A DNA stretch of 64,000 nucleotides, taken from contig OZ037772.1 of the NCBI GenBank assembly GCA_964035545.1, positions 4,778,233 to 4,842,232 on the forward strand. The letters run 5' to 3'. This DNA is from Bugula neritina. Taxonomy: Eukaryota; Animalia; Bryozoa. The position numbers and the translations under genes were made by a program. This document shows, piece by piece, positions 8,379 to 62,529 of this stretch (positions are counted from its first letter, which is position 1; every line of letters starts with the position of its first letter). Below the pieces are notes generated by a model. It had not been told where the DNA came from and made no database searches. It saw only the letters and a program-made list of their open reading frames with translations.

Positions 8379-8420
<42 letters not shown>

Positions 8421-20350: not shown

Positions 20351-20566
20351 ATACCTACAGTGTCTGGTTCAGACACTCTGGAGAAGATGTACTTGATTGG
20401 AAATAGTGTCTAAAAGACACAAGAGAATACACCATAGATGATATAAAGGTCACACAATCACCCACATGATAGTAGATGTAGCTCTACCAGATAATATTCA
20501 TTTACTGGCTCCAGAGTTGAGATACTTGAGAGTGAAAAATGTGGAATCTGACTCTAACCTGTCTGA
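20351..20566 (+). pseudogene. Candidate upstream (LRR N-cap-like) exon of the LRR-ROCO-caspase gene, disrupted in its 5' half
   Basis: Acceptor ttacag and strong phase-2 donor GA|gtaagt, compatible with the LRR exons. The 3' part encodes MIVDVALPDIIHLLAPELRYLRVKNVESDSNLS; no frame is open across the 5' part. Confidence 0.35.
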
Positions 20567-22134: not shown

Positions 22135-25100
22135 AGGATTATCATGGCGGAAAATGCTACCGGAGTACTCCCAGTAGCAGAAGAGCTGGCGCAGCCTCCA
22201 TGTCTTATAGAAAGTGATCCTATACGTAAAATAGATTGCGAGGACCCGTGCTACAAGGTAAAAAGGCGAACAGGCATTGCCTGAAAGCCTCTATCTTCAC
22301 TGGCCAGGAGGATTTTGAACAGTTCATCCAGGAATTTAACGAAATAGTAGCCATTACACAATGGCAACCCCGTGTGGTCCTGATACAGTTGTGGCTGGCG
22401 TTGACGGCGAAGGCCAGGCCTTTTGGGCTATAACCTTACGTCAATGGGATATCTGCTGCACTGTGTGCCACCTTCGGCTTTTCCACTGTAGACGCCAGGG
22501 CCTGTCTACAAGGTCGCGGTGTGACCGGTGCACATCTCTCCAGGAACATGCCGCTTCGGTTGAGAAGTTGGTAAGATCGCGTATGGCGACTTGCCACCTG
22601 TTAATCAAGAGTGTTACACTTTTGATACCTTTTGGCAATCACTTAACGACCTTTTTCTCTACCACCAGTTTCTGGCGAGAAGAGTCGTGACAGCTAAGAA
22701 TGCCTTTCGCGAAGGTGAGGCCTACCTATTGGCTACCCAGCTTTGTAGGTGTCGCATGAGTTCCCGACAGGTTAATGTAGACTAGGCAGAGGATCGCTAT
22801 GGTCATCGACCCACTCACATAGCGGCAACCACCGCAAGTTATCCATTAGACCCAGAGGTTAGCTGTATGACCAAAATGATGGGGAAGCTAGTGGCAGTCC
22901 TAGCTTAATCCGAGGCGTCGAGCTCCGCTCAAAAACTCCTGCAGTCGAGGGTTGGGCCGTGGCAACGACCCTCTGCCATGTGCTGGGAATGTGACGGTCA
23001 CAAAAATCTTCATTAGGAGTGCCTGAGGATGGGAAGGGAGCTAAACTCTCACAACCCATAGATGTTTCCGCCTACTGCGAGTCGAGCGTGAGGGACTTCC
23101 CATGGGAAAACCGTCAGCTGTTCGAATAGATGCGACGGACAATCCTGCAAGGATGGCAGGTGCCACACAAAACAGATCGACCGTATAGTAGATCGGATAT
23201 CTTCACCTTGCCACTCTACAATAGCTTCGGCGGGTTACCTGAACCAGAACCTGAAGAGAGACAAGACTTTGCATCTGAGGGAATGCTTTTCCCCTCTTGA
23301 AGACCTGCTCGTGACTGCCGAAAGTCACATCAGTCACAGCTCAAAGCGAGAGAGGTATCTCCTGCATAGAATGAGCGAGCTAAGGGAGTACAGGTTCAAA
23401 CCTATTGGGCAGCTACTTCTTACCAGGCAAAGTAGCCGGTCAGGTTGTCATCTTCCTGTTAGATTCAGGCTTTACCACAAACATTTTTAGTCGCCAGATC
23501 TTTGATACCCTCATCGCTAGAGATAAGGCTGGGTTGGAACCATACGACGGGGAACATGGCACGTTGGCGGACGCGTCATGTATTCCCTTCCACAGGATAG
23601 TTAAGGGCAAGCTTTTAGCTGCAACTGCCTTGCTGAGGTTTGCATTGTAATCATACTATATAAGAATTCAGTACCAGTAAAATAAAATCTCACCTAATTG
23701 TGCTAGAGTCAGATTTTATAAACTATGTTGTAGATCTTCTTTTTCCCCAGTGCAATTTTTTTGGAAATTTCAATTTTCATTTTTTTGCAAAGTTAGAGAC
23801 AAAAACACTGGCCAATTTTGCCAGAAAAGCTGACTTTTTAGTACCAGCAAAATATCTCAGCAGCAAAACATGATATCTGAATAAAAATTGCACTGCTGGA
23901 ATCCAAAGATATTTCTCCAGTGCAAATTTTGTTCTTTTTCCAATGACTTTGCTAGATTGCTCATAAATTGGTGATTTATACACTGAAAATGCTATTATTT
24001 TTAATAGGAAACTAGCAGCGCGCAGCACTTCACGCTTCAATGAGCACGTAGGGATGAGAAGATATTGGCGCGTGCATACTTATTGCAGGCTTGCTAGTTG
24101 GCAAGCTATAATAAATAGCTTGCTTTGTACTTTGTTTATGTAGCACCTATATTGGAATGTTGATAGATAACGCAGCCCTAATGAAAGTTGCTGCTTCATG
24201 GTTGTAGTTTGATCTTAGGCTAAACAAATGCAAGTAGGCAACACGCATGCCACTCGCAGAGCAATATTATTCAAGAACCTGAACTACATTTTGAGAGAAA
24301 TTTTTGATATTCTTAGTGAGGATGCCCTTAACTATCCTAGGTCTATGGTATAGTTTAGTTGACAGGACATGTGCAGGATCAGGCTAACCGGAAGACGTTC
24401 ATTGCCTGTCAACGCAAGGAGGATGCTCTTTTCGGAATGCTGTTCTTGAAGGAAATGGATGCCATATTGACCTTAGAAAGCCTGCGGTGGTTATGGCCGG
24501 GTATAAGCTCACCTTTTTCAACAAGTTTGGCAGTCCTTTCATAGGAGGCGTGTAGATAGTACGGAGCTGTATGATACCTAGCTGCTCTCGTCCAACTATC
24601 TATTTCAGGGTGAATAGTAGGCGGATCTTAGAACTAAAAGTAGTGGAAGGCGTGCATGATAGAATCTAACTTGCCAGCAGCTTAAATAAGTTGACTGCAT
24701 GAAAAGAGATTTTAGTGAAGTGTATCAACCCTTTCACGTAGTCTGTGGAGCTGTCGTCTGGGTTCATGGTGGGCCGGTTTCACTCTGTCTAAAAAAGAGA
24801 TGTGGGGCCGTCATTGGGCGAGATGACGGACAAGCTCTGTCGACCTCAGCAAGGAGGTCGGACACCGGTCCTGACACACATCAAGGACTTGTACAAAGTG
24901 GCCTGTCAGGGCTGCATTAGAAACGAGGAATGCCTGGCCATGGCAAAGCTGCTGCGGGAGTAAAAAGACGTGTTTCGTAATGGAGGCTTGTAGACCTGAC
25001 ACGGGCTGTCCGTCACAATATTCTTCTAGCTGCAGGGGCGGTCCCGATCCCACAATCTACACATAGGTTAAGACCGGAAAAGAAAAAGGTGAGCCGACAA

Positions 25101-27600
25101 ATCCTGGATCTTTTGGACCATGACTTCATAGAGCCAGCACACAATGCGTAGAGCTCGCCAGTAATTTTGGTCAAGGAGACAGATGGGAGTAGGCGGCTCT
25201 GTGTGGATTACCGCAAGCTCAATAACGTACCCCCTTCCCTCCCAACCATGAGTCTCTGGATGCCCTGGCCGGTAAGAAATACTTCAATACGTTAGACTTG
25301 CTTAGTGAGTACACGCAGGTCTTCCTTAGCCTTGATGCTCAGTATAAGGCTGTGTTTATAACGCTTGATGGGCTCTGAAAATGGAAAGTATTGCCGTTCC
25401 GGTTGCCCTCTGCCTCGGCCACTTTTCAGAGACTCACGGAGAAATTTCTTAGCGGACTCCACTGAAAGACCCTGCCAATCTACCTTGATGACATCATCAT
25501 GGTCTTCCTAGACTTTGCGACCAATGTCAGCCATTTGAGAGAGGCTTTCGTAAAACTCAGAGGTGCCGGTCTTAAATTGAACCCCTCTAAGTGCGCTTTG
25601 TTACAGCTGGAGGCTAGGTACCTGGGGCACGTTGTCGGTCAAAACGGCGTGGCGACAAACTCCGAGAAGGTAAGGGCATTGAAAGACTTGGTCAGCTTTC
25701 AGGATTTGACTAGACTCCAGGCATTCCTGGGTCTGGTAAGGTACTACTGACAGTACACACCAGAGTTTGCAGGATGGCACGGCCATTAAAGCGGCTCACC
25801 ACGAAAGGGGTTCCTTTGCGGTGAACTCCGGTTGAACAACAGGCGTTTGACCATCTCAAGGGTTGCTTGCTTGAGGCTCCTGGCTTGGTTTATTCCGACC
25901 TAACTCGGGAATACATCCTGAATACGAACGTCAGCTACCACAATGTCGATGCTGTGTTGTGGCTGGTCCATGAGGACTGAGAAGTAGTACTAACTTACTT
26001 TGGTAAGGCTTTTTTCGCTGCCGAAAAGACTCACTGCACTATCTGGAAGGAGCTCTTGGCAGCAATCAAGGCGATGAAACAGTTCAGGCGTTTTTTTTAT
26101 GACAGAATGTTTGGGCTGCATACAGACCTTGCTTCATTGGTTTGGTTGAGCAACCATTAAGCAAGATCGCGTTGTGGCTTGAAAGCCTGTCCGAGATTTC
26201 TTACTGTGGAAAAACCACGGCTTTGCAGACGGGCTAAGCCGGCGACCTAATGGAAGATGCTGACAGTGTCTTGGCATCAAGAAGAGTGATGGAAGCTGCT
26301 CATGCCCCGAGTTGGAGACGCTGTCTGACTTTGGAGCGTAGTACAACTGGGTGCACGGCCAGCTGGTAAAAGTGCGTAAGCTGTACGAACCCTCCCCCGC
26401 TAACCCCATTTTGGCTGGTAGCGTCTCTGAGCTGAGGAAACTCCAGGAAAACCTTTCTGGAGTGGTAGCCGACCTAAATCAGGTCAAGAAGAAATGGAGA
26501 TGGCCCAGTGAGGCGCCACTGCCAACGCTGCGACTCCTTACGGATCAACGGTGATGTACTTCTAGCCATCACGTCGGTCGCCAACGGTAGACACCCAGAG
26601 AGGAAGAGGGTGGTCAGTCTTGCCGTCTATTTGCCGAGAGGTAATTTGGAACACTCATAAGCAGGCTGATGCAGGAGTTCAGAGGGTGTTTGCCAAGTCG
26701 TCACTCCGGTGGTACTGGCCAAAGATGGGCGTGATGTGCAGCTCAAAGTAAGACAGTGGGAAATCAGCCAGGCCAGTAAGCACGGCTGTCTCCCTGGTGA
26801 GGCGGGATGGCAGAAGTTATATGCTGGCTGGCCCTGGAAAGCAGTAGCTGTTGAGCTAGTCAGGCCATGCTCCTAACACTCCGAGGCAACAGCTGGATCT
26901 TCGTGATCAGAGGCCATTTTACTCGGTGGGCTGACACACTGGCTATCCCAGACACATCGGCTCCTACTGTGGCCCGTGTGCTAAACCGGAATGTGCTACT
27001 TTGGCCTCCCTGAGCAGATACATTCGGATCAAAGTGCTCAGTTTTATTCACAACTAATGAGCAACTTCTGTCGCTTCTGGGAGATGAACCAAAGCAGCAC
27101 TAACCATCCACAAGGTACAAGGTGGTAGAGTGTAACAACAGGATGTTGGGTGATGCGCTCTAGACCCTGCTCCTTGGCCTTAATCCAGAGAAATGGGAAA
27201 CAGCGGTTCCACAGGTCATGTGAGTTCCCAACCACCTTACCTACCATGTTCCTGACCACAATTCTGTACACGAGTATGTGGGGGAGTTGGTAGAGCGCAT
27301 GAGGGCAGCACACAAAATGCTTCGGGAGAGGCAATGACAGGTGCGGACTGAGGGCTCTTATGAGCCTCCCCCTATCAGGTGGGAGACTGGATCTAAATGG
27401 CCAACTACAGCAGGCGTTGTGGACAAGCAGCTTAGTTATGGCCCAAGTTCATGGAGCCCTACCTGGTAGTCGAGGCTATGGCCAATCATACGTACAAGGT
27501 CAAGCGCTCCATACAGGTAACAATCCAGAATGAAGATCGTTGGAAACCGTATTGAGCTAGTCCAATTGCGATAGGAAAAGCGCCACGTTGTTGGAGCCTA
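22135..27600 (+). mobile_element. Degenerate Ty3/Gypsy internal region (gag, protease, RT, RNase H, integrase); no LTRs recognised
   Basis: gag-like FTGQEDFEQFIQEF, protease FLLDSG (~23460), RT CVDYRKLN and YLDD (25481), YLGHVVG, RNase H ELLAAI, integrase remnants and GPYLV (~27455). Numerous stops and frameshifts. Confidence 0.9.
23591..24341 (+). mobile_element. MITE copy 3, inserted in the Gypsy protease region
   Basis: Same TIRs with a 2-bp TC duplication; removing it restores the pol frame CIPF-YGIV. Confidence 0.9.
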
Positions 27601-27722
27601 GACAGGATAGTTAAGGTCAACCTTTTAGTTCTAGCTGCTATGCTGATGATGCATTGTTATCATATAAGAAATCAGTCCCAGTAAAATGAATTTTTACCCA
27701 ATTGTGCTAGAATCAAAATCTA
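27601..27722 (+). mobile_element. MITE copy 4, left-end fragment
   Basis: gacaggatagttaaggtcaaccttttag... matches the first ~120 bp of the MITE and truncates the Gypsy element. Confidence 0.75.
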
Positions 27723-28069
27723 AACGTATTTGAATCTATTGAGAAGTTTTAAAATTAGATATAATTTGCAAATAAATATATGTTAACAAAGATATAAATC
27801 CATATAAATACCATGACATATTATAGTCAAGGAAAGCATAAAACATATTACAATATTTTAATATCTTCTGTTTGAAGTTAGTAAAAGTTAAAAAGTTAGA
27901 TTCATTAAAAAGCTTTTTTTGGGAAATATACAGGTAAAGCTTCAATATGTAATATCCTGCAGACTAAAATCAATTGTGTTGAGTTAGCAACATATAATAC
28001 AAAAAAATTGTTTTTTATATATATTTTGTATTATAAAATTTGTATTTTATAATTTATTGTCTGCTATAG

Positions 28070-28210
28070 CATGTCTGATCTGAAGAATCTGGAGACTCTT
28101 GATATGTCGGAGAATAACTTCAGTGAAGGATTACCTGATGTATTCACATCGATGACATCTCTAAGAGAAGTGAATATGGAGAACTGTGAGCTACCAACTC
28201 TACCTAAAAG
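28070..28210 (+). CDS. LRR exon 1 (141 nt, two LRRs)
   Basis: tatag|C ATG; MSDLKNLETLDMSENNFSEGLPDVFTSMTSLREVNMENCELPTLPK; weak donor gttttt. Confidence 0.75.
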
Positions 28211-31200
28211 GTTTTTAAAACCAACAATTATATGAAGTAGAAATAAACTGTTTTTATCTGGGATTTTGCATGGCTACATGTTTTTAGATTTATATTTTTT
28301 TAAGATAGATATTTTGTCAAAATTTCTCAAATCTGTTGCAAATTCTTGCAATATTATTACATAAATAAGCAAATAATTATACGCTAATGAAGAAATGTTA
28401 TGTATAAAATTATAACATGTGGTTAAATACAATATATTACATATGACAAACGGTACCATACTTTAGTTTCTAATGCTTGAAATGAGTAAATTAGGTAAAT
28501 AATAAGTTGACTTTATTCGCCTTTTCTTAAAAACGAAAAAGCGTAAGTTTCAAAATGTCATATCCTGCTGACTAAAGTAATTCTTTAATCTGGCAATATG
28601 ATGTATAATTGATATTTAAACAAGTCATACAGTAATAAAATTTGAAGTTTTAGAAACAATTATTTTGAAGTATTACATAAAAACGAATTATTTTCAAAAA
28701 TATAGTGGTAACAATAGAAAATATTGTTTTATATACTAATAAAATCTATATTTCATAACTGATATTCACCTTAAGATCTTGAAAAGAGAAACTCATGCAG
28801 TATATTTCACACACATATGTGATATTTATATGTAATAATGTATTTTATTCAAACTTCATTTTCCATTGGATGAAATTTTTATAATATCAATATACGACTT
28901 TATGCTAGAACTGCATTGCCTTTGCTTTAGATGGTCGTAATACTATAATTATAATGTTGCCTCAACTGGTATATGTTTACTATAGCATGTCTAATCTGAA
29001 GAATCTGGAGACTCTTAATATGTCAGGGAATAACTTCAATGAAGGATTACCTGATGTAGTCACATCGATGACATCTCTAAGAGATTGAATATTAGTTTCT
29101 GTGAACTACTAACTCTACCTGAAAGGTTAGTAAGAATGTATTAAATAAAATGTTCATTAGTGTGAAGGATATAATTCTGCATTAGATGTACCTATTTTTT
29201 TATTAAAGTTATCTACATATTCTGAAGTTGAGCTTGGAAAGTTCTAGAAGCATTTTGATTAGCTTTCTAGAGTTTCTAAGTGCAATATGTCGGGTTCACA
29301 GTAGAATCACAAGTACCAACTGTGTTAAACTTTTTCCACTGAGAGTTGACCACCGACTTTTCAGCTGACACCTTACCAACTACACTACAATAACTATTGG
29401 GTAATCTTAACATCTCATTCAACCAATTCTTCTGAACTCCACTGGCCCCTTTTCTACTCAATAACTATTAGGCTTCCCTGACTTCTCAACTCCCTTTGCA
29501 TCCAAACATACTACATGGCTGGCTATAGCAGTGTAAACAAACGCTGTACAGTTGTACAATATAACATCTCATATTCAATATAACATGCTTACTCGAACAT
29601 GTTTGATGTACATTTTTAGTAAACTCCCAGATGAATAATAATAATTTTTTATTCTCTTTACTTAATGAAAGTTTTCAGATTGTTATAACAATTCTTGATA
29701 CAGTTATAAAATCTGTGATCGTCCCCTCTTACCAGAATAATAGCTAATACAATCATTATAATAGCATATGTAACTTGAGATAGGAGTACGCTAATGTGTA
29801 TACAGGTCTAGTTCAACTCATCCTTCTGAGCCATCCCCCCCCCCTTATATATATGAGTAGAGTAGCTAGTCCTGAGTTCATTCAGGAAGCGCATTACATG
29901 ATATATAGATTTAGGCATAAAATAATTTGTAAACGAGCACGAAGAACAGTAAAAACATGCATGAGGGTCTGTCCAACATGTCCCCTGCCTACATACTTGT
30001 GACCCTCCAACGCATTACAGATAAACTTATTTTTAAACATAAATTTGAGTTATGAAGAGAGAAAAATCACCTTTTAGATGTTTTTTTATATAAATATAAT
30101 ATTACAAAACATGGAGCCTGCAATAATTATTGAAACTCCACTGTGTAATGATTCTTAAGAACGTAGAATAAAGTAATTTGAAATAATCGATAATGTGGCC
30201 CCTAGCCCAAGCTGAAGTTTAGAATATGTGGCTCCCACCATAAAATGCTCTGTTTCGAAAGCCCTCGCTACGAAAAGGTAGGAAACCCCCAGTCTAATAC
30301 ATGAGCTGCCTACTTGTATGACACAGCGGATGTGCACAGCCATAATCTACTACAATATTACTAAAGGAGTAAAAACTTATTTATGATTTGACTTTTTTAG
30401 CTGTTTCTTGAAAAATAAGAAGCTCAAGCTTCAATATGTCATATCCTGCAGACTAAAATCAGACTCTGATCCGGCAATATAAATTATAATGTATGATTCA
30501 TATTTAAATAAGTCATACAGTATTTTGTTATACTATAAGCTGTGATAAACTTTACAGATTTAGAAACAACTAATCTGCATTTTGAATTATAAAACAAAAA
30601 TGGATTATTTTCAAAAACTACCGGTAATGATAGAAAATATTGTCGTATATACTAATAAAATATAAAATTTATAACTTGTATTCAGCTTAATGTCTTGAAA
30701 TGAAGAACTCTGCAGTATATTTCACACACATATGTGATATTTATATCTAATAATGTCTTTTATTCCAACTTCATTTTTCATTAAATAAAATTTATATATC
30801 AATAAAAAACTTTACGCTATAATTACATTGCTGTAGCTTAAGATGGTTGTATTACTATGTGATGTCTCAACTGGTATATGTTTACTATAGCATGTCTAAT
30901 CTGAAGAATCTGGAGGTTCTTGATATGCCAGGGAATAACTTCAGTGAAGGATTACCTGATGTATTCATATCAATGACATCTCTAAGAGAGTTGCATATGC
31001 AGAACTGTGAACTACCAACTCCACCTGGGAGGTTAGTAAGAATGCATTAAATAAAGTGTTCATTTGTGTGAAGGGTATAGTTCTGCAATAGAAGTACCTA
31101 TTTTTTTATTAAAATTAGCTACATGTTTTAAAGTTCTACAGTTTTACAAACTTTCTGTATTTCATAAGTGAAATATATTAGGTTCACAATAGAATCAAAA

Positions 31201-34200
31201 GTACCAACTGTGTTACATACTTCCCATTGCAAGTCAACCACCGATTGCTAGCTGACGCTCTATAACCATTACATTACAAGGACTACTGGGTTATCCTGGC
31301 ACTCCATGCAACCAGTTCTTCTAAACTCTACTAGTCCCCTTACTACTTATTTAGTTTAGGCTTCCCGGGCCTTTCAACTCTCTTGCCATTCTACTAAAAT
31401 GCTATACTAAATGTGAAAAAGCTCCCTAACCATTACACATGGGTCGTTAGGTAATCTCAACACCACACTAAGCTGTTCACATGTGCATTCAGCTCCCTGC
31501 TACCATAAAGCTGTTCACGTGCACTAACCGTCATAATGTAAGAACTTCAATTACAGGAGGTTCTAATTTTACATGCCCCTCCTTTCAAATGGAAGGATAT
31601 CACAATTACTAGACATCAAATTTTTATAAGCGCATTACAGAGATTACTTGGTTAGCATGTGAATAAAATCTTAGTTGTATATATTATATGCTTCACTTGG
31701 TCTAATACATGAGCTGCCTACTTGTATGACACAGCAGATGTGCACAGCCAAAATCTACTACAAGATTACTAAATGATGTTTCAATTACTATATTATGTTT
31801 ACTATAGCATGTCTAATTTGGAGAATCTGGAGACTCTTGATATGTCACAGAATAACTTCAGTGAAGGACTACCTGATGTATTCACATCAATGACATCTCT
31901 AAAGACATTGTATATGAAGAACTGTGAACTAGAAATGCTACCTGAGAGGTTAGTGAAAGCAACTCAATATGAAATGCAAATAAACTATTTTATCTGTAGT
32001 ACACGACATCCAGGATTTGCCCGCATTTCTTTATATTTAAATTTTTTGCTGCTGAATAATTTCTGAAAATTCTTCAAACCTGTGAAATTATCTTTGCTAT
32101 ATTGTGTATAATATGCAAATAAATGCACGCCAATAAAAAGAATATATGTAGTATTATGACATATGATTCTGGAAAATATAAAAAATGTTACAATACTTTA
32201 ATTTCCTATATTCCTTAACGCTTGAATTAAGTAAAAGTTGATGAGTTAAGTTCAGTATATAGTTTTTTCTTGAAAAGATATACAGCTTTAGCTCTATTAT
32301 ATAATATACCTGCAGACTAAAACTAGCCATTGATCTGACAACATAATGGTAATTGATATCCAAATTATACAACTTTTTATTAAACACAATGAAAATTGTT
32401 AATTTGACAATCTTTAAATTTTAAAGTATAACAAAAACAAATTATTTTAGCAAATCACCTGTAATTATCGAAAAGAAATGATTTTAAATGTGAATAAAAT
32501 TTTAGTTGTACATCTGATGCTTTACTCAGTTTTAAAAAAAGCTCATGCTACAGTACATGTTTCACATGCATATGTAATATCTACTGTATATCTACTAATG
32601 TATTTTATTCTAACTTCATTTTCAATCAAATAAAATATGTATGTCAATCGGCAATTTTATGCTTGAATTACATTGCTTTAGCTTAAGATGGTTTTATTAC
32701 TATATGATGCTTCAACTGGTATATGTTTACTATAGCATGGCTAATCTGAAGAATCTAGAGACTCTTTATATGCCATATAATAACTTCAGTGAAGGATTAC
32801 CTGATGTAGTCACATCAATGACATCTCTAAGAGAAATGAATATTAGTTTCTGTCAACTACTAACTCTACCTGAAAGGTTAGTGAAAATGAATCAAATAAA
32901 ATATTTATTAGTGTGAAGGATATATAGTTCTGCAATAGAAGTACTTATTTTTTATTAAAATTTTCTACAGGTTTTAAAGTTCTACAGTTTTACAAACTTT
33001 CTGAATTTCTTAAGTGCAATATATTAGGTTCACAGTAGAATCACAAGTACCAACTGTGTTACATACTTCCCATTGGAAGTCAACTACCGGCTTGCCAGCT
33101 GATGCACTAACCATTATACTACAAGGGTAACCCTAACACTCCATGCAACCAGTTATTCTAAACTCTGCTGGTCCCCTTACTACTCATTCAGTTTAAGCTT
33201 CCCGGGCCTCTCAATTCTCTTGGCGTACTACTAAAATGCTATACTAAATGTGAAAGAGCTTGCTAACAATTACACATGGGTCGTTAGGTAATCTCAACAC
33301 CACACTAAGCTGTTCACATGTGCATTCAGCTCCCTGCTACCGTAAAGCTATTCACCTGCACTAACCATCATGATGTAAGAACTTCAATTACAGGAGGTTC
33401 TAATTTTACATGCCTCTCCTTTCAAATGGAAGGATATCACAATTACTAGACATCAAATTTTTATAAGCGCATTACAGAGATTACTTGATTAGCATGTGAA
33501 TAAAATCTTAGTTGTATATATTATATGCTTCACTTGGTCTAATACATGAGTTGCCTACTTGTATGACACAGCAGATGTGCACAGCCAAAATCTACTACAA
33601 CATTACTAAATGATGTTTCAATTACTATATTATGTTTACTATAGCATGTCTAATCTGGAGAATCTGGAGACTCTTGATATGTCACAGAATAACTTCAGTG
33701 AAGGATTACCTGATGTATTCACATCAATGACATCTCTAAGAGTGTTGTATATGGAGAACTGAAAACTAAAAACTCTACCTGAGAGGTTAGTGAAAGCAAC
33801 TCAATATGAAATACAAATAATATGATTTTATCTGTAGTACACGATACCCATTTCTTTATACTTAAATTTTTTGCTGTCAGGTAATTTCTGAAAATTTTTC
33901 AAACCAGTGAAATTATTCTTGCCATATTGTATATAATATGCAAATAAATACAAGCCAATAAAAAGATTCTATGTAGTATTATGACATATGGTTCTAGAAT
34001 ATATAAAAATGTCACAATATTTTAATCTCCTATATTCTTTAACGCTTGAATTAAGTGAAAGGTAATGAGTTATGTTCAGTATATAATTTTTTTTCAGAAG
34101 ATATACAGCTTAAGCTCTATTATATAATATACCTGCAGACTAAAACTAGCCATTGATCTGACAACATAACGTATAATCAATATTTAAATTATACAGTCTT

Positions 34201-37200
34201 TCATTAGATACAATAAAATTGTTAATTTGACAATCTTTAAATTTTAAAGTATAACGAAAACAATTTACTTTAGGAAATCACCTGTAACTATCGAAAAGAA
34301 ATTATTTTATATGTGAATAAAATTTCCGTTGTACATTTTACGCTTTACTCAGTTTTGAAAAAAATATCATGCCGCAGCACATGTTTCACATGCATATGTA
34401 ATATCTACTGTTTATCTACTAATGTATTTTATTCCGACTTCATTTTCCATCGAATATAATCTGTATGTCAATATCGGCAATTTTATGCTAGAATTACATT
34501 GCGTTAGCTCAAGATGGTTGTATTACTATATGATGCTTCAATTGCATGGTATTTTTTTACTATAGCATGTCTAATCTGAAGAATTTGGAGACTCTTCATA
34601 TGCCAGGGAATAACTTCAGTGAAGGATTACCTGATGTACTCACATCAATGACATCTCTAAGGACGATGTATATGCAGAGCTGTGAACTACCAACTCTACC
34701 TGAGAGGTTAGTGAGAATGCATCAAATAAAATGTTCATTAGTGTGAAGGTTATAATTCTGCCATAGAAGTACTTATTTTTTTTATTAAAATTATCTACAG
34801 TTTTTAAAGTTCTACAGTTTTACAAACTTTCTGCATTTCATAAGTGAAATATATTAGGTTCACAATAGAATCACAAGTATCAACTGTGTTACATACTTCC
34901 CATTGAAAGTCAACCACCGGCTTATGCCAGCTGACGCACTAACCATTACACTACAAGGATAACCCTAACACTCCATGCAACCAGTTATTCTAACTTCTGC
35001 TGGTCCCCTTACTACTCATTCAGTTTAGGTTTCCCGGGCCTCTCAACTCTCTTGGCGTACTACCAAAATGCTATACTAAATGTGAAAGAGCTTGCTAACA
35101 AATACACATGGGTCACTAGGTAATCTCAACAACCCACTAAGCTGTTCACATGTGCATTCAGCTCCGTGCTACCATAAAGCTATTCACGTGCACTAACCAT
35201 CATGATGTAATAACTTCAATTACAGGAGGTTCTAATTTTACATGCCCCCTCCTTTCAAATGGAAGGATATCACAATTACTAGACATCAAATTTTTATAAG
35301 CGCATTACAGAGATTACTTGATTAGCATGTGAATAAAATCTTAGTTGTATATATTATATGCTTCACTTGGTCTAATACATGAGCTGCACACTTGTATGAC
35401 ACAGCAGATGTGCACAGCCAAAATCTACTACAACATTACTAAATCATGTTTCAATTACTATAATTATTATGTTTACTATAGCATGTCTACTCTGGAAAAT
35501 CTGGAGACTCTTGATTTGTCACAGAATAACTTCAGTGAAGGATTACCTGATGTATTCACATCAATGACATCTCTAAGAGAGTTGCATATGAAGAATTGTA
35601 AACTAGAAATGCTACCTGAGAGGTTAGTGAAAGCAACTCAATATGAAATACAAATAAACTATTTTATCTGTAGTACACGACATCCAAGATTTGCCCGCAT
35701 TTTTCTATACTTAATTTTCTTGCTGCCAAATAATTTCTGAAAATCTTTCAAACCTGTAAAATTATTCTTGCTATATTGTAAATGGTATGCAAGTAAGTAG
35801 AAGCCAATACAAGGATTCTATGTAGTATTATGACATATGGTTCTAGAACATATAAAAATGTCACAATACTTTAATTTCCTATATTCCTCAACGCTTGAAT
35901 TAAGTAAAAGTTAATGAGTTAAGTTCAGTATATAATTTTTTTTAGAAGATATACAGCTTAAGCTCTATTATATAATTTACCTGCAGACTAAAGCTAGCCA
36001 TTGATCTGACAACATAACCTATAATTGATATCTAAATTATACAGCCTTCTATTATATACAATAAAAATTGTTAATTTGACAATCTTTAAATTTCAAAGTA
36101 TTACAAAAAGAAATTATTTTAGCAAATCACCGGTAATTATTGGAAAGAATTTCTTTTATATGTGGATAAAACTTTAGTTGTACATCTGATGCTTTACTTT
36201 GTTTTGAAAAAAGCTCATGCTGCAGTACATGTTTCACATGCATATGTAATATCTACTGTATATCTGCTAATGTATTTTATTCTAACTTCATTTTCAATCA
36301 AATAAAATCTGTATGTCAGTCGGCAATTTTATGCTAGAATTACATTGCTTTAGCTTAATATGCTTGTATTACGATATGATGTTTCAACTGGTATATGTTT
36401 ATTATAGCATGTCTAATCTGAAGAATTTGGAGACTCTTCATATGTCAGGGAATAAGTTCAGTGAAGGATTACCTGAGGTATTGACATCAATGACATCTCT
36501 AAGGACGTTGTATATGAAGAACTGTGAACTACCAACTCTACCTGAGAGGTTAGTGAGAATGCATTAAATAAAATGTTCATTAGCGTGAAGGATATAGTTT
36601 TGCAATAAAAGTATTTATTTTTTATTAGAATTATCTACATATTCACGTGCACTAACCGTCATGATGTAAGAACTTCAAATACAGCCCCTCCTTTCAAATG
36701 GAAGGACATCACAATTACTAGACATCAAATTTCTATAAGCGCATTACAGAGATTACTTGATTAGCATGTGAATAAAATCTTAGTTGTAGAATTACATTGC
36801 TTTAGCTTAATATGCTTGTATTACGATATGATGTTTCAATTACTATATATTGTTTACTATAGCATGTCAAATCTGGAGAATCTGGAGACTCTTCATATGT
36901 CAGGGAATAACTTCAGTGAAGGATTACCTGAGGTATTCACATCAATGAAATCTCTAAGAGAGTTGGATATGAAGAATTGTAAACTAGAAATGTTACCTGA
37001 GAGGTTAGTGAAAGCAAGTCAATGAGAAATACAAATAAAATGTTTTATCTGTAGTACACGACACCCAGGATTTGCCCGCATTTCTTTATACTCAATTTTT
37101 TTGCTGCCAAATAATTTCTGAAAATTTTTCAAACCTGTAAAATTATTCTTGCTATATTGTATATAATATGCAAATAAATACAAGCCAATAAAAATAATAT

Positions 37201-40200
37201 ATGTAGTATTATGACATATGGTTCTAGAATATATAAAAAATGTTACAATACTTTAATTTCCTATAACGCTTGAATTAAGTAAAAGTTGATGAGTTAGGTT
37301 TAGTATATAGTTTTTTTCTTGAAAAGATATACAGTTTAAGTTCTATTATATAATATACCTGCAGACTAAACCTAGCCATTGATCTGACAACATAACTTAT
37401 AATTGATTTTTAAATTATACAGTCTTTTATTAGATACAATAAAAATTGTTAATTTGACAATCTTTAAATTTGAAAGTATAACAAAAACAAATTATTTTAG
37501 CAAATCACCTGTGATTATCGAAAAGATATTATTTTATATGTGAATAAAATTTTAGTTGTACATCTGATGCTTTACTCTGTTTCGAAAAAAAAGGTCATGC
37601 TGCAGTACATGTTTCACATGCATATGTAACATCTACTGTTTATCTACTAATGTATTTTATTCCAACTTCATTTTCCATTGAATAAAATATGTATGTCAAT
37701 CGGCAATTTTATCTTAGAATTACATTGCTTTAGCTTAAAATGGTTGTATTACTATATGATGCTTCAACTGGTATATGTTTACTATAGCATGTCTGATCTG
37801 AAGAATCTGGAGACTCTTAAAATGTCAGAGAATAACTTCAGTGAAGGATTACCTGATGTATTCACATCAATGGCATCTCTAAGGAGGTTGTATATGCAGA
37901 TCTGTAAATTACCAACTCTACCTGAGGGGTTAGTGAGAATGCATTAGATAAAATGTTCATTAGTGTGAAGGATATAGTTCTTCAACAGAAGTCCTTTTTT
38001 TTATCAAAATTATCTGCAGTTTTTAAAGTTCTACAGTTTTTAAAGTTCTACAGTTTTACAAACCTTCTGCATTTCTTAAGTGCAATATATTAGGTTCACG
38101 GTAGAATCACAAGTACCAACTGTGTTACATACTTCCCATTGAAAGTCAACCACCGGCTTGCCAGCTGACGTTCTAGCCATTACACTACAAGTGTAATCCT
38201 AACACTCCATGCAACCAGTTATTCTAAACCCTGCTGGTTCCCTTACTACTCATTCAGTTTAGGCTTCCCGGGCCTCTCAACTCTCTTGGCGTACTACCAA
38301 AATGCTATACTAAATGTGAAAGAGCTTGCTAACAATTACACATGTGTCACTAGGTAATCTCAGCACTACACCAAGCTGTTCACATGTGCATTCATTTCCC
38401 TGCTATCATAGGATAGTTAAGGGCATCCTCACTAAGAATATCATAAATTTCTCTCAAAATGTAGTTTGGGTTCTTGAATAATATTGCTCTGCGGGTGGCA
38501 TGCGTGTTGCCTACTTGCAATTGTTTAGCCTAAGATCAAACTACAACCAGTAAGCAGCAACCTTCATTAGGACTGCGTCATTTATCAACATTACATTATG
38601 GGTGCTACATAAACAAAGTACAAAGCAAGCTATTCATTATAGCCTGCCAGCTAGCAAGCCTGTAATTAGCATGTATGCGCCAATATCTTCCCATCTCTAC
38701 GTGCTCATTGAAGCGTGAAGTGCTGCGCGCTGCTAGTTTCTTATGAGAAATATGGCATTTTCAGTGTATAAATCACCCATTTATGAGCAATCTAGCAGAG
38801 TTATTGAAAAAAAAATTGCACTGGAGAGATATCTCCGGATTCCAGCAGCGCAATTTTTATTCAGATATCATGTTTTGCTGCTGAGATATTTTACTGGTAC
38901 TGAAAAGTCAGCTTTTCTGGCAAAATTGGCCAAAATTGGGCAGTTTTTTGTCTATAACTTTGCAAAAAAAATGAAAATTGAAATTTTCCAAAAGGTTACA
39001 CTGGGGAAAAAGAAGATCTACAACATGGTTTTTAATTTTTGACTCTAGCATAATTAGGTGAGATTTTATTTTATTGGTACTGAATTCCTATATGATTACA
39101 ATGCATACCTCAGCAAGGCAGTTGCAGCTAAAAAGTTGCCCTTAACTATCCTGTGCAAGAATACATGGATGCTTCGAAAATTTAACCAATGGAACTTACT
39201 GGATTACATAATTATCAGGCAAAGGAATTTGAGTGAGGTTTTAGATACTTGAGCTGTAAGAAGAGCAGATTGTGGCACATATTATGTGATGCTAAAGTAA
39301 AAAATAAGGATTTAAAGAAAACACATTGCAAGAAAGACACAATTAAACTAAGCACTGTCATGCTGAAAGATCCAGAAAAAACAGAACAACTTAAAAAGAA
39401 ATTGAATAAGAATATAAAGTGTTGAGATGAAAATAATAATGAGATAGAGCAAATGTGGAAAATTTTGAGAACAGTGTTTTCAACTGATAGTGAAGTGGTT
39501 GAGAAGCAAGGCCGTAATAATCAGGATAGCTTAATGAGCATGATAAACTGCTACAACAGTTGATTGAGAAGAGAAACAAGGCAAGACAAGCTTTCTTCCA
39601 GTGTAATACCAGAGTGAAGAAAAGAGCTGCTTAAAAGCACAGAGCAGTCTTCAGAGGTATACCAGAGAAATGAAAAGTAACTGGTGGGAAGAAGAAGCAA
39701 TAGAACTCCAAATGACAGCAGACAGGAGGGACATGAAAGCATTATATTTAGGCTCAAAAGAAGCTTATGATCTGAAATCAAGAGTAATGATTCATCTCCG
39801 AGACCATAATGGACAAACAGTTTTACAAGAGAAGGGAAAAATATTAGAAAAATATCTGATCACTTCAATCAATTGCTTAACATACCAGGCGAGCTGGATA
39901 AAGCAGCAAAAAACATAGTGCAAAAGTCGCCTGTTGCATTTTTGGATGGTTCTCCCAATATGGATGAGCTCGTGTCAGCAAATAGCTCAACACAGGATGG
40001 AAAAGCTGTTGGCAGAAATGGTATTCTATCTTTGGTATGAAAGCATGGTGGTCAAAAAATGACAGGTGGTCTTTACAATACAGATTTTGTTGGACACCGA
40101 GACAGTACCACCAGACTGGACGGAAGCAAGCATTGTCCAATTTTTAAGAAAGGCGAAAGGAAAGTAAACAGGAATTATTGGGCATAATCTTGTATCTATT

Positions 40201-43200
40201 GTAGACAAGATTTCCTCTTGCATACTATCGGCTAAATGCATATACTACCCAAGAGGTGCTACTGGAGTCTCAGTGTGAATTCAGGAGTGGAAAGAAGCGC
40301 AAGTGTAAGAGAGGTGCAGAAAACATAATATGCTACTGTCCACAGCATTTTTTGACCCTAGTAAAGCATTTGATATTGTATATATTGCAAGCCTTTGGCA
40401 GGTTCTTAAAAGGTTTGACTGTACAGACAAGTTTATTTACATCAAGGAAGCTCTTCATACAGGCATGCAAGCAAATGTGGCAGTGGGCAGTTCCATCTCA
40501 AATAATTTTGCAGTAACAAATGGAGTCAAACAAAGGTGTTTCCTTGCACTAACACTTTTCTCACTCTACCGGTCAGCAATGCTTGAGGTTGCGTTCAAAG
40601 ACAGCTCCGAAGGAGTATCATAAAAACTAGAAAAGAGGCAGATCTTGTTGACGTTGCTCATGTCAAGTCAAAATTTAAAACCACTACTGAGTGAGTAAAA
40701 GATTTGCTATTTGCTAGTGATAGTACTTTAGTTGCTCTTCATTCTTATGCTATACAGACTCCAGTCAACAGATTTGCCAATGCTGCAAAATATTATAATC
40801 TCAAAATTATCATCAAGAAGACAGAATGCCTCTACCAGCTTGCAAATTTTGAAAATGCAGGTGTACCGTGCTACGTTACTCGCTGCCTTACTGTATGGTG
40901 TTGAGACTTAGAACATACACAGTGTGCTAGTAGACAGACTGCAAGCGTATGTCATGCAATATCTATGCTCAATCATGGGTGTCTTTTAGAAGGACAAGAT
41001 TACTAACCAAGAAGTATTAAAGAGAGCTAGCTTAGCATCTCTAAAATCTATCCTTATTCAAATGAACTTGAGATAGCTAGGACATCTCGAGACGACAGAT
41101 CATGGCCATTTATGTTAACAAATTCTCTATTCGCAGCTGAAAAAAAGTACACAAAGCCAAGGAAGGCCAAGATTTAGATTTAAAGACACTGTAAAGCGAA
41201 ATATAAAAAAGTTGGACATGTACAGAGATAGCTGGCAAAGGAAGGGTTAATGTAGATATGGATGGAGACGTTTGATCAAACTAAATTGAAAAGAGTCATT
41301 GTCGCACCGACAGACTGCTCTGATGACGACAGTGATGGTGATGATGATAATGATGATGATAATGAAGATGATGATAATGATGATATTGATTCTCATTATT
41401 ACTTTTGTTGTTATTTTAAGATCATAAAAAAATAGATATTTAATTTGTTTTAAAAAACAGTTAGGTTTGATGTATCATATTATATTTCATGATATTTTGC
41501 TGTATTTAGTTTGCTTCCAAGCGATGCTGAAAAATTTCTACAGTAAAACAGTTGCATAGAGTTGAGGTTTTTTAAATGACGTGTTTAAGAAAAATTCCCC
41601 GTGATGAGTTTGCAGACATCTTTGCAAATGCGTTATCGTCTGAAATAGGTGAAATATATTTTTTTAAAGATCTTCAAAAGCTATATTCAGAAGCGACTTG
41701 TTTGTTAGAATCTGACTTATTATATATCATATTTTATCTGAATTACAGTTTGCAGTATTTGGAGAATCTGGAAGTTCTGAACATTGGGCACAACAACATG
41801 ACTATAATTCCAGAGGCTGTCTGCAACTTGAAAAAATTATACAGACTAGAAGTTTCTGGATGCAAAGCTCTAACCACTCCCCCTTATGAAGTCTGTACAC
41901 AAGGATTATCAGCTATCAGACAATACTACAAAGATCTGGCAAAAGGTAAAGGTGAAAGTCTTCCCCTAGTCACCATTGCCGTGATTGGTCACACAATGGC
42001 AGGGAAAACGAGTCTCATCAGAACATTGCAGAGTGAAGAGCGAAAGCGAGTGCTGACAAATCGTGGACCTGAGTTTGAAGTTGACGAAACAACTAAAGTC
42101 TTTAAAGTTGAAGAGTTAAAAGTAAATAACACAGTTCTGAGACTAATAGACCTGGGAGGACAGCCAGTGTATCACATGACATACCAGCTAACACTTAAAC
42201 AAAACTGCATGCCGATAGTAGTGGTGAACATGGAGCACTATGATCTGCTGGCAAAGGAGAAAGGAGACAGAGAGGCTGTGAGAAGACTGGCTTTTGATTG
42301 GCTGGCTCATTTATATGTGGCAAATCCTGGAATTAGACAACCGAAACTGGTTTTTACTCACAAAGACAAGTTTGAAGAGGAGAATTTCACAAAGCTGACT
42401 TCTAATTTCACCAACACAGCTGATCTACTAAAAGATGAAATCATCAGAGAAGAGAAACAACTAGACCAAAGCATAGCAGAGATAGAACATTTCCATCAAC
42501 ACAAAGAGCTGTTCCTGCGTAAGGATATCTACTCAGTTGGGAAAGAAGATACTTATCAAATTTTTGAGAATATGAAATCTGCCATCTTTAATTCAGCTCA
42601 AAAATTTGTAAAAGTGTTGCCAAAACTATGGGAAGATGTGAATGAGAAGATTTTAGGATTGCAGACAGCATTCAGTACATTTGATGAAATACTTCATGCA
42701 GTGCAGCAAGTAGGTAGAGGTATCACACCTGATCAACTCACCACGATCCTCACCTACATGCATGATTGTGGTAAGATCTTGTGGTACAAAGATATCAAGG
42801 AGTTGAACTTGATTATTTTTCACAAAATTGCGAAAGTTACTGAGCTACTCAAAGTCTTGTTTCAGCATGATGAAAATGTGTGGCAGATTCGGCAAACAAG
42901 TTTCAAACCACAGCTTCTGACTAACGGAGCTTTTCTTGAGGAAGAACAGTTTGAGAAATTTGTAGGAGATTTCTTGTCAGCAGGAATCATGGAGAGCCAA
43001 CTTCTAGAACATTTAATCAAAGCTGAGACAGCATTCTTTGATGAAAATGCATACCTACTTGCTGTCACTTTGCTGCAGAAATTCAGCATTCTCTACGGAC
43101 CAGCTGATCTGGAATCAAGGAGCTGCTTCATTGTTCCCTTCTACTCTCCTGATTACTTAGAGAACAATCTTACTACTGATGAAGACATCATTCTCCATGC

Positions 43201-54032: not shown

Positions 54033-54330
<298 letters not shown>

Positions 54331-59435: not shown

Positions 59436-59887
<452 letters not shown>

Positions 59888-61878: not shown

Positions 61879-62070
<192 letters not shown>

Positions 62071-62529
62071 GTATGTATTGTATGTATTCTGATATATGGA
62101 CAGCAGCTGTTTTGGCATTTCTCCTCTCATCAGTACAAAACAGAATATTGTGGCTCCTGACTTTGCAATATTAGAGTTACGTTAGTATTGAAGTTGCTTC
62201 AAAAGTTTTTGTAGGCGATGTTATTAATATATAGCTTAGTAATCTACAGATAAATATAAAAAATCGAATCTGAATTAATGAATAGCAAATTTTCAATCCA
62301 ATAAAAAGTTATTAAATTATGCACACCTAGTTAATTTTATTCAGACATTTTTCATAAAGAAAGTATAATAAACAAAATTGTTCAAATTGCAATTTTATGC
62401 TTGGTTTTATTAAATTTTGTTATTGTTTTGGTTTTTCCAGTTCGTAAGCAGTCGCTTTGAGGTTGCTAATTGAAATGACTGATTCTATATTGAGAATTTT
62501 GGTCTCCTATCACTTTGAACGACTTTTTA

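What the first reader, a model, noticed from the sequence alone, without database searches (positions are those of the whole stretch)
28070..37928. Modular array of eleven phase-symmetric 141-nt LRR cassette exons
Seen: every exon is tatag|C-ATG...(A/G)G|gt, 141 nt (47 aa, two LRRs; exon 2 is 140 nt) and phase 2-2, so any subset can be spliced, duplicated or deleted in frame. Introns are also duplicated, in an A/B ~1.84-kb unit. Established: exon-per-LRR shuffling is described for ROCO genes of the brown alga Ectocarpus, and cassette diversification for lamprey VLRs and arthropod Dscam. Inference: this is an animal receptor-diversification system working by combinatorial splicing and/or unequal crossover, coupled to a caspase output.
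Basis: partly seen in the sequence, partly recalled or inferred. Interest (0 to 1): 0.88.

Follow-up and report, generated by a model that had tools for sequence, protein, structure and literature searches.

The report
Modular LRR exon array, ROCO-caspase gene
Eleven near-identical 141-base exons, each coding two leucine-rich repeats, form the sensor part of a GTPase-caspase gene. The gene belongs to a family of more than 250 copies in a bryozoan genome; the array grew by exon duplication, but this copy looks broken and combinatorial splicing is not shown.

Summary
Eleven exons (28070-37928) all read tatag|CATG...AG|gt, are 141 nt long and are phase 2-2. E2 is 140 nt (frameshift) and E6 carries an in-frame TGA. 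The introns alternate between two classes, giving a 1.84-kb two-exon unit.

The array is the LRR region of an LRR-Roc-COR-caspase gene. At least 267 Roc-COR exons exist in this 216-Mb genome, which is probably a Bugula-like bryozoan, and most have a caspase exon just downstream. Six close paralogues carry 7-14 such exons. Distant paralogues and the bryozoan Watersipora share the same exon design.

Variation sits on the concave LxxLxLxxN x-positions, where dN/dS is about 1.7-1.9 against 0.63-0.75 elsewhere and 0.2-0.3 in Roc-COR. Chimeric introns and a mosaic exon point to unequal crossover or conversion. Germline exon shuffling is therefore well supported.

Combinatorial splicing is untested. 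RNA contigs cover exons only, but every perfect match is shared with paralogues. This copy also has a frameshifted N-terminal exon, so it is probably a young pseudogene.

The closest parallel is the brown-algal ROCO genes (72-bp phase-2 LRR exons). First-stage note s1-444460 had already flagged the neighbouring paralogous array.

The parts
20362..20566 (+). N-terminal LRR-cap exon of the gene (...GHTITHMIVDVALPDNIHLLAPELRYLRVKNVESDSNLS|D, donor GA|gtaagt at 20566). It is frameshifted by a 13-nt gap relative to the neighbouring paralogue and contains stops.
   Evidence: An RNA contig loose end matches the paralogue exactly and the window with 3 mismatches. Of the 113 other family matches, 112 are uninterrupted and one has a single TAG; the window copy splits into two frames with a TAG.
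21903..27724 (.). Retroelement-derived sequence inside the 7.5-kb intron between the N-terminal exon and E1. It includes a ~760-bp dispersed repeat (23591-24338) and degraded Ty3/gypsy-like pol fragments (24342-27563).
   Evidence: GC is 0.46 against a 0.30 background. ORF fragments carry RT and integrase motifs and many stops.
27733..28069 (+). Remnant of an array-type intron immediately upstream of E1.
   Evidence: 86% identical to the intron preceding a cassette exon in paralogue C8_5021.
28070..28210 (+). LRR cassette exon E1 (141 nt, intact, weak donor gttttt).
28986..29125 (+). LRR cassette exon E2 (140 nt, 1-nt deletion causing a frameshift and stops). Its orthologue in paralogue C8_5021 is intact.
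29126..30890 (+). Intron 2: a chimera of a B intron (with an ~800-nt insertion) and the 3' part of an A intron. This is the footprint of the loss of one exon, and it is shared with paralogue C8_5021.
30891..31031 (+). LRR cassette exon E3 (intact).
31808..31948 (+). LRR cassette exon E4 (intact, type followed by an A intron).
32736..32876 (+). LRR cassette exon E5 (intact). It is only 83-84% identical to E3/E7 although its flanking B introns are 93-95% identical, and it is 92% identical to E2, so it is a swapped or mosaic exon.
33645..33785 (+). LRR cassette exon E6 (141 nt, in-frame TGA at the conserved Cys39 codon).
34566..34706 (+). LRR cassette exon E7 (intact).
35482..35622 (+). LRR cassette exon E8 (intact).
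36408..36548 (+). LRR cassette exon E9 (intact).
36549..36862 (+). Intron 9: a B-type intron shortened to 314 nt by internal deletions.
36863..37003 (+). LRR cassette exon E10 (intact). It is a mosaic: the 3' 61 nt are E8-like (58/61), and the middle shares E9-specific bases.
37788..37928 (+). LRR cassette exon E11 (intact, last of the array).
37929..41748 (+). 3.8-kb intron with transposon fragments.
41749..43670 (+). Large exon entered in the same phase 2 (tacag|T TTG CAG...). It encodes the last LRRs, the Roc GTPase (GHTMAGKTS P-loop, DLGGQ) and COR. It is an open frame under purifying selection.
44494..44658 (+). Caspase (Peptidase_C14) exon, start of the p20 region.
44909..45142 (+). Caspase exon with the catalytic SHG and QACS motifs.
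45585..46068 (+). Two further caspase (p10-region) exons, at about 45585-45698 and 45943-46068.
   Evidence: tblastn with Watersipora and amphioxus homologues

Best explanation
The array is the LRR 'sensor' region of a cytosolic LRR-Roc-COR-caspase gene, an MFHAS1-like ROCO GTPase with a caspase fused to its C-terminus. The gene is one of six close paralogues within a lineage-specific family of at least ~250 genes in a bryozoan genome. The family's building block is a 141-nt, phase 2-2 exon that encodes exactly two LRR turns. Adding, losing or swapping exons therefore never breaks the frame or the solenoid. The window's array grew by tandem duplication of a two-exon, 1.84-kb A/B unit through unequal crossover. 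It was later edited by deletion and conversion. It diversified mainly at the solvent-exposed concave beta-strand residues. This is germline birth-and-death evolution of a candidate immune or cell-death receptor family. It is not, on present evidence, a splicing-based diversity generator. The copy in the window carries three ORF-breaking lesions in its 5' third and is most likely a young pseudogene, or at best is expressed in truncated or exon-skipped form. Shown: the anatomy, the family size, the conserved exon design, the rearrangement footprints and the selection pattern. Inferred: ligand sensing by the LRRs, a GTPase switch and caspase output.
For: Anatomy of the exons and introns.

Gene identity: Roc, COR-A and LRR Pfam hits on the 713-aa ORF, and caspase Pfam hits with His/Cys motifs.

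Family size: 267 Roc-COR candidates, of which 68 were scored; 66 are open frames of 630-750 aa and two carry a single stop. At least 30 of the first 35 have a caspase exon 0.7-3.5 kb downstream on the same strand. The N-terminal cap exon gives 115 matches.

Presence in relatives: the LRR-Roc-COR-caspase architecture occurs in RefSeq proteins of the bryozoan Watersipora subatra and of amphioxus. In Bugula neritina only a Roc-COR-caspase model with a single LRR match was recovered.

Exon design: the six close paralogues have 7-14 exons of 141 nt. Paralogues with only 45-50% Roc identity have 141/144-nt two-LRR phase-2 exons. The Watersipora gene for P0023 has 141-nt phase-2 exons with the same ...CCAGAGAG|gt boundary.

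Shuffling: exon types are intermixed among the genes on the tree. There are near-identical neighbouring units in C8_5021, an exon-loss footprint in I2, the mismatch between E5 and its flanking introns and the E10 mosaic.

Selection: amino-acid entropy peaks at positions 11 and 14 of LRR1 and 33, 35, 37, 38 and 40 of LRR2. Parsimony dN/dS is 1.70 at the ten LxxLxLxxN x-codons and 1.87 with positions 40 and 42 added, against 0.63-0.75 at the remaining codons. Fisher p = 6e-5, and the deficit of synonymous changes against the neutral expectation has p = 0.007. Roc-COR dN/dS is 0.21-0.33.

Lesions in this copy.
Against: Along the window lineage, Roc-COR shows 22.5 synonymous and 27.5 non-synonymous changes (omega about 0.4 by my estimate). 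The sister gene shows 29 of each. The downstream exons are open. The gene therefore cannot have been dead for long, and skipping of E2 and E6 with initiation at a downstream Met would still give a protein.

The dN/dS estimate uses parsimony on a poorly resolved tree of 141-nt sequences that recombine, so it is indicative only.

No transcript specific to this gene was seen either way.

No population or haplotype data were available.

No biochemical evidence exists that these LRRs bind ligands or that the caspase is activated by the GTPase.
Confidence: 0.75

Rival explanations
1. Regulated combinatorial (cassette) alternative splicing: individual cells or conditions include different subsets of the phase-symmetric exons. 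One gene would then yield many LRR sensors, as reported for brown-algal ROCO genes. Disabled exons E2 and E6 would simply be skipped.
For: Every exon is phase 2-2 with near-identical splice sites, so any subset is in frame. Roc-COR and the caspase stay open and constrained despite two dead exons. About 10% of cassette exons in the sister arrays are also disabled while their genes look intact. In Watersipora, an intact, splice-competent cassette exon (L021:27356-27496) is absent from the RefSeq protein P0023. Ectocarpus ROCO genes with one-LRR phase-2 exons have up to nine annotated splice variants (PMC11378527).
Against: No isoform evidence of any kind was obtained. RNA contigs give only generic consecutive junctions that fit many paralogues. 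No 'isoform' entries appeared among the Watersipora homologues. No docking/selector-type inverted repeats exist in the introns. Dead exons keep perfect splice sites, so nothing marks them for skipping. The N-terminal exon of this copy is also broken, which splicing of cassettes cannot rescue.
Confidence: 0.15
2. The array, or its dead exons, serves as a donor reservoir for gene conversion or somatic assembly into other family members, in a lamprey-VLR-like manner.
For: Mosaic exons and the exon/intron mismatch (E5, E10) show that sequence exchange between cassettes has occurred in evolution. Exon types are shared across four linked genes on contig C8.
Against: All cassettes carry functional-looking splice sites and lie inside ordinary transcription units. 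The exchange footprints are germline and few. There is no incomplete germline 'acceptor' gene, and no evidence of somatic rearrangement. One assembly cannot show somatic events.
Confidence: 0.04
3. Assembly artefact or non-genic tandem repeat that merely looks like exons.
For: Tandem units of about 0.92 kb are a classic source of mis-assembly.
Against: The copies differ by 6-17%. The array sits in a 13.3-Mb contig. A colinear paralogue shares the unusual chimeric intron at 93% identity. The same exon design occurs in 5 other arrays here and in an independent Watersipora assembly, where RefSeq proteins contain the 47-aa repeats. RNA contigs cover exons and not introns, and they show exon-exon junctions.
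Confidence: 0.02

Closest known systems
LRR-ROCO genes of brown algae (Ectocarpus, Saccharina): exon-per-LRR shuffling (Zambounis et al. 2012, PMC3341825; Teng et al. 2024, PMC11378527)
   Same: Both have an N-terminal LRR array followed by Roc-COR. In both, the LRRs lie in short tandem exons that are all phase 2, so exons can be gained, lost or shuffled in frame. Variability is concentrated in the LRRs, and both form a multigene family proposed as immune receptors.
   Different: Here one exon holds two LRRs (141 nt) rather than one (72 bp). The duplicating unit is two exons plus two distinct introns. The protein ends in a caspase, whereas the algal proteins stop after COR. The family is about 7 times larger (>=267 against ~35 genes). 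The organism is an animal, so the similarity is convergent or an old LRR exon-phase habit. Alternative splicing is annotated in Ectocarpus and is not shown here.
MFHAS1/MASL1, the vertebrate LRR-Roc-COR protein (the name RefSeq gives to the Watersipora homologues)
   Same: The LRR-Roc-COR order is the same. Roc has the GxxxxGK[ST] P-loop and DxxGQ. Pfam Roc and COR-A match.
   Different: MFHAS1 is a single-copy gene in humans (established knowledge, not tested here) and has no caspase. Here there is a C-terminal caspase, a >250-copy expansion and LRR cassette exons. Orthology to MFHAS1 was not tested; the RefSeq name is automatic.
Expanded NLR (NACHT-LRR) repertoires of invertebrates and NLR-caspase inflammasome signalling
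   Same: Both are cytosolic and combine an LRR sensor, an NTPase switch and a death effector. Both form large, clustered, fast-evolving families with many pseudogenes.
   Different: The switch is a Ras-like Roc GTPase, not a STAND ATPase. The caspase is on the same polypeptide instead of being recruited through CARD/PYD adaptors. The six-frame search found only one weak NACHT match in this genome, but the sensitivity of that search is doubtful.
Bacterial LRR-AP-GTPase(Roc)-COR conflict proteins with variable C-terminal effectors (Kaur et al. 2021, PMC8195603)
   Same: Rapidly evolving N-terminal LRRs, then Roc-COR, then an interchangeable C-terminal effector.
   Different: This is a eukaryotic, intron-rich gene with modular LRR exons. 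The effector here is a caspase. Lingula and amphioxus relatives carry CARD or Death domains instead.
Arthropod Dscam1 exon clusters and lamprey VLR cassettes
   Same: Tandem arrays of similar exon-sized modules that encode the variable part of a recognition molecule.
   Different: Dscam uses mutually exclusive choice of one exon per cluster, guided by docking and selector RNA pairing; here the exons are additive repeats and no such inverted repeats exist. VLR cassettes lack splice sites and are copied somatically into an incomplete gene; here the cassettes are ordinary spliced exons.

Membership tests
ROCO (Roc-COR) GTPases | Roc (Ras of complex) GTPase domain with P-loop and switch II | tested here: met
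   PF08477 scores 27.6 bits against a cut-off of 27 on residues 134-222. The GHTMAGKTS and DLGGQ motifs are visible in the translation. Homologues score up to 64 bits.
ROCO (Roc-COR) GTPases | COR domain directly C-terminal of Roc | tested here: inconclusive
   COR-A scores 20.2 bits, below the 35.3 cut-off, on residues 349-425. The region aligns over its full length with homologues in which COR-A and COR-B pass, such as P0096 and P0111.
Caspases (Peptidase_C14) | C14 fold with a catalytic His (SHG) and Cys (QACxG) | tested here: met
   PF00656 gives E 4.7e-10 and 2.7e-10 on two exon translations. FIGSHG and VIQACS are present. Continuity of the spliced frame through all caspase exons was not assembled.
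Brown-alga-type exon-shuffling LRR-ROCO genes | LRRs encoded by tandem, equal-length, phase-symmetric (phase 2) exons upstream of Roc-COR | tested here: met
   Eleven exons of 141 nt, phase 2-2. The Roc-COR exon is entered in the same phase. The difference is two LRRs per exon instead of one.
Brown-alga-type exon-shuffling LRR-ROCO genes | Evidence of exon gain, loss and exchange between and within paralogues | tested here: met
   7-14 exons per paralogue, the A/B unit duplication, the chimeric intron I2, mosaic E5 and E10, and an intermixed exon tree.
Brown-alga-type exon-shuffling LRR-ROCO genes | Diversifying selection on LRR residues | tested here: met
   dN/dS is 1.7-1.9 at the concave x-positions against 0.63-0.75 elsewhere, with p = 6e-5 for the contrast. 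The method is approximate: parsimony, with recombination ignored.
Brown-alga-type exon-shuffling LRR-ROCO genes | Multiple splice variants that combine different LRR exons | tested here: inconclusive
   Short RNA contigs show only generic junctions shared by paralogues. No isoform entries were found among relatives.
Dscam-type mutually exclusive exon clusters | Docking-site and selector-sequence complementarity in introns, with one exon chosen per cluster | tested here: not met
   There are no inverted repeats of 24 nt or more linking introns, apart from two AT-rich 27-nt chance-like pairs. RefSeq proteins of the relative contain several consecutive cassettes.
Lamprey VLR-type somatic cassette assembly | Cassettes without splice sites flanking an incomplete germline gene, with somatic copy-choice | tested here: not met
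   All cassettes have canonical acceptors and donors inside the transcription unit. Somatic events are not testable with one assembly.
NLR / STAND receptors | NACHT or NB-ARC NTPase between effector and LRRs | tested here: not met
   No NACHT or NB-ARC is present in the gene. Genome-wide, there is 1 weak NACHT match and 0 NB-ARC matches in six-frame searches.

The most novel reading that the evidence does not exclude
Bryozoans may have replaced NLR-type receptors by a >250-gene family of single-chain LRR-Roc-COR-caspase sensors. In this reading, the phase-symmetric two-LRR cassette exons are shuffled in the germline and also alternatively spliced, giving each colony or cell a combinatorial repertoire of cytosolic sensors wired directly to a death protease. 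Possible uses are pathogen or symbiont surveillance, or colony allorecognition.
Probability: 0.12. Interest if true: 0.85.

Novelty: new variant of a known kind. Interest (0 to 1): 0.6.

Why it matters
Exon-per-LRR shuffling in ROCO genes has so far been described only for brown algae. Finding the same logic in an animal has two consequences. The logic here is phase-2 tandem LRR exons feeding a Roc-COR switch, with a caspase on the same chain and more than 250 gene copies.

First, it shows that the design is a recurrent route to fast-evolving intracellular sensors.

Second, it identifies the likely dominant innate-receptor family of a phylum whose immunity is almost unstudied. I found no paper describing it in the library searched.

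The family also offers a natural single-polypeptide sensor-switch-protease that could be tested biochemically. The specific array in this window matters less: it is a probably decaying copy, useful mainly as a record of how such arrays grow and break.

Tried and rejected
1. Gene-specific expression and isoforms. One read-laying run on 28900-34760 used four putative RNA runs. Contigs lie on exons only, but they are 31-117 nt long, and every perfect match also occurs in paralogues. There is therefore no verdict on transcription or on skipping of E2 and E6. No contig reached the E2 frameshift or the E6 stop.

2. RNA holders of the Roc-COR exon. Only 5-10% of the words are held, so the signal cannot be separated from paralogues.

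3. Isoform evidence in Watersipora through the protein database. No 'isoform' entries appeared. One intact cassette exon is unused by the RefSeq model, but that is a single weak hint.

4. Dscam-like intronic RNA pairing. None was found.

5. Rfam scan of the window: nothing. TRF does not see the array because its period exceeds 500.

6. Locating the start codon. The N-terminal cap exon was found at 20362-20566, but the first coding exon upstream of it was not identified.

7. Exon-by-exon orthology between the window array and its sister array. Only the end units are clearly orthologous. The internal units are about equally similar within and between genes.

8. Using metagenome contigs of the related host to compare arrays between individuals. 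I rejected this without running it, because at ~94% identity orthologues cannot be told from paralogous units, which are themselves 88-95% identical.

9. NACHT and NB-ARC census. It came out nearly empty, but the six-frame, exon-by-exon search may miss split domains, so it is treated only as a hint.

Full report
**Observation**

BLAST of the first exon against the window finds exactly eleven + strand copies between 28070 and 37928 and nothing comparable elsewhere. Printing each copy with its flanks shows the acceptor tatag|CATG in all eleven. The donor is AG|gttagt in ten and AG|gttttt in E1.

Ten copies are 141 nt and E2 is 140 nt. The frame is 1 nt + 46 codons + 2 nt, so the exons are phase 2-2. 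The junction codon AG|C reads Ser, and each exon encodes two LRRs, LxxLxxLxMxxNxF and LxxLxMxxCxL.

Two copies are disabled. E2 has lost one base, with stops downstream. E6 has TGA in place of the conserved Cys codon.

The introns fall into two classes that do not align with each other:
- Class A is I4, I6, I8 and I10 (89-92% identical) plus a diverged I1.
- Class B is I3, I5 and I7 (93-95% identical) plus the start of I11.

Two introns depart from this pattern. I2 (1765 nt) is a B intron with an ~800-nt insertion, joined near its 3' end to position ~270 of an A-type intron. That is the footprint of the deletion of one exon. I9 (314 nt) is a B intron with internal deletions.

**What the gene is**

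The 713-codon ORF at 41576-43717 matches LRR, Roc and, more weakly, COR-A. It shows a GHTMAGKTS P-loop and DLGGQ. It is entered at 41749 in the same phase 2 (tacag|T TTG CAG).

Downstream exons match the caspase domain (PF00656, E ~1e-10) and carry SHG and QACS.

Upstream, a loose end of an RNA contig led to a conserved N-terminal LRR-cap exon at 20362-20566. Between that exon and E1 lies a 7.5-kb intron filled with retroelement debris.

The gene is therefore N-cap, then 11 LRR cassettes, then LRR-Roc-COR, then caspase.

**Family and organism**

The genome has 216 Mb in 321 contigs. A six-frame search with the Roc-COR exon returns 267 candidates. Of these, 68 were scored; 66 are open frames of 630-750 aa and two carry a single stop.

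For at least 30 of the first 35, a caspase exon lies 0.7-3.5 kb downstream on the same strand. The N-cap exon has 115 matches.

The closest named proteins come from three species:
- Watersipora subatra 'MFHAS1 homolog' entries with LRR-Roc-COR-caspase.
- A Bugula neritina hypothetical protein with Roc-COR-caspase and only a single LRR match recovered.
- Amphioxus proteins with the same architecture or with a Death domain.

The sequencing runs that hold the sequence are of one organism and of a 'symbiont metagenome'. The window is therefore most likely from a bugulid bryozoan. That identification is an inference.

**The exon module is a family trait**

The five other close paralogues (79-89% Roc-COR identity) all carry arrays of 141-nt exons, 7 to 14 per gene, with the same splice sites. 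About 6 of ~60 exons are disabled.

Paralogues with only 45-50% Roc-COR identity have 141- or 144-nt two-LRR exons in the same phase.

Watersipora proteins show perfect 47-aa periodicity. In the genomic locus of P0023 each repeat is one 141-nt phase-2 exon ending ...CCAGAGAG|gt.

**How the array evolves**

Several observations point to duplication, loss and exchange of exon units:
- Exon types are intermixed among the four linked genes on contig C8, and some neighbouring units are nearly identical.
- The window array and its sister C8_5021 are colinear at both ends and share the chimeric intron I2 at 93% identity. Their internal units are about as similar within as between genes.
- E5 is 83-84% identical to E3 and E7 although its flanking introns are 93-95% identical. 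It resembles E2 at 92%.
- E10 is E8-like at its 3' end (58/61) and shares E9-specific bases in the middle.

All of this fits unequal crossover and conversion acting on in-frame modules.

**Selection**

Across 53 intact cassettes, amino-acid entropy peaks at positions 11 and 14 of LRR1 and at positions 33, 35, 37, 38 and 40 of LRR2. These are the x positions of LxxLxLxxN/C on the concave face. The convex half is nearly invariant.

Counting changes by parsimony on a FastTree topology gives these dN/dS values:
- 1.70 at the ten x-codons, and 1.87 with positions 40 and 42 added.
- 0.63-0.75 at the remaining codons.
- The contrast has Fisher p = 6e-5, and the deficit of synonymous changes against the neutral expectation has p = 0.007.

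Roc-COR between paralogues has dN/dS 0.21-0.33. The method ignores recombination and is approximate.

**Status of this copy**

The window's N-cap exon differs from all the others. Of the 113 other matches, 112 are uninterrupted and one has a single TAG. The window copy has a 13-nt gap relative to the neighbouring paralogue, which splits it into two frames with a TAG.

Together with E2 and E6, that makes three independent ORF-breaking lesions in the 5' third of the gene.

Against a long-dead gene, Roc-COR along the window lineage shows 22.5 synonymous and 27.5 non-synonymous changes, close to its sister's 29 and 29. The caspase exons are also open.

The most economical reading is a recently inactivated member of a birth-and-death family. 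Exon skipping with downstream initiation is not excluded.

**Transcription and splicing**

Four putative RNA runs laid on 28900-34760 give contigs on exons only, none on introns. They include exon-end-to-exon-start junctions. One contig joins the N-cap exon of the neighbouring paralogue, as an exact match, to a cassette start.

The family is therefore transcribed and spliced as modelled. The pieces are only 31-117 nt long, however, and each perfect match also occurs in paralogues. Neither expression of this gene nor any alternative cassette usage can be judged.

No intronic inverted repeats of the Dscam type exist. No isoform entries were found for Watersipora relatives. One intact Watersipora cassette exon is left out of the RefSeq protein, which is a weak hint only.

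**Comparison with what is known**

The closest described system is the LRR-ROCO family of brown algae. There, each 72-bp phase-2 exon encodes one LRR, exons are shuffled, and several splice variants are annotated (PMC3341825; PMC11378527).

The present case shares the architecture, the phase and the evolutionary mode. It differs in four ways: two LRRs per exon, a two-exon duplication unit, a fused caspase, and a family about 7 times larger in an animal.

LRR-Roc-COR with variable C-terminal effectors is discussed for bacteria, with DAPK as the metazoan relative (PMC8195603).

Searches of the paper library found no description of bryozoan ROCO-caspases or of their exon structure. The proteins do exist as automatic RefSeq models.

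Six-frame searches found one weak NACHT match and no NB-ARC match in this genome. This hints that the family may occupy the NLR niche, but the sensitivity of that search is uncertain.

**Verdict**

This is a modular, in-frame, fast-diversifying LRR exon array in a ROCO-caspase gene, shaped by unequal crossover. Combinatorial splicing remains unshown, and this particular copy is probably a young pseudogene.

Noticed in passing
whole genome G000: Very large expansion: at least 267 Roc-COR exon candidates, 300 caspase-domain candidates and 115 matches to the N-cap exon. They are clustered especially on C1 at 32.5-35.5 Mb and on C6 at 2.5-6.3 Mb.
   Followed up: partly
whole genome G000: Only one weak NACHT match and no NB-ARC match in six-frame searches. 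Either STAND-type receptors are nearly absent or the exon-by-exon search misses them.
   Followed up: partly
L021:27356-27496 (Watersipora subatra, OY755161.1): An intact 141-nt cassette exon with canonical splice sites is not part of the RefSeq protein P0023. A second gene model (944 aa, caspase) overlaps the whole locus on the same strand.
   Followed up: partly
P0033 (Watersipora XP_067945196.1), residues 1-8: The N-terminus MGNGQSRK looks like an N-myristoylation motif. This suggests that some family members are anchored to membranes on the cytosolic side.
   Followed up: no
window 17062-17819, 23591-24338, 27597-27724, 18998-19646: A ~760-bp dispersed repeat is present in several copies here and next to the paralogous genes. 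It may be solo LTRs. The copy at 23591 is followed by degraded gypsy-like pol sequence up to about 27563.
   Followed up: partly
window 13481-14482 (-): A 333-aa ORF with a reverse-transcriptase domain (RVT_1, E 2.5e-9). This is another retroelement upstream of the gene.
   Followed up: no
window 38300-41500: The intron between E11 and the Roc-COR exon contains transposon fragments. One piece (38392-38520, - strand) encodes nearly the same peptide as 24228-24353 (+).
   Followed up: no
window 55637-56599 (-): A 320-aa ORF with a weak rhodopsin-type 7TM match (E 0.005, below the cut-off). It may be an intronless GPCR gene.
   Followed up: no
window 8375-8492; 54034-54324; 59439-59882; 61882-62078: A (CACACACG)n microsatellite and several long (TA)n tracts.
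   Followed up: no
P0203 (Lingula anatina) and P0111 (Branchiostoma lanceolatum): Relatives carry CARD or Death domains where the bryozoan genes carry a caspase. The C-terminal effector of animal LRR-Roc-COR proteins therefore seems interchangeable.
   Followed up: no
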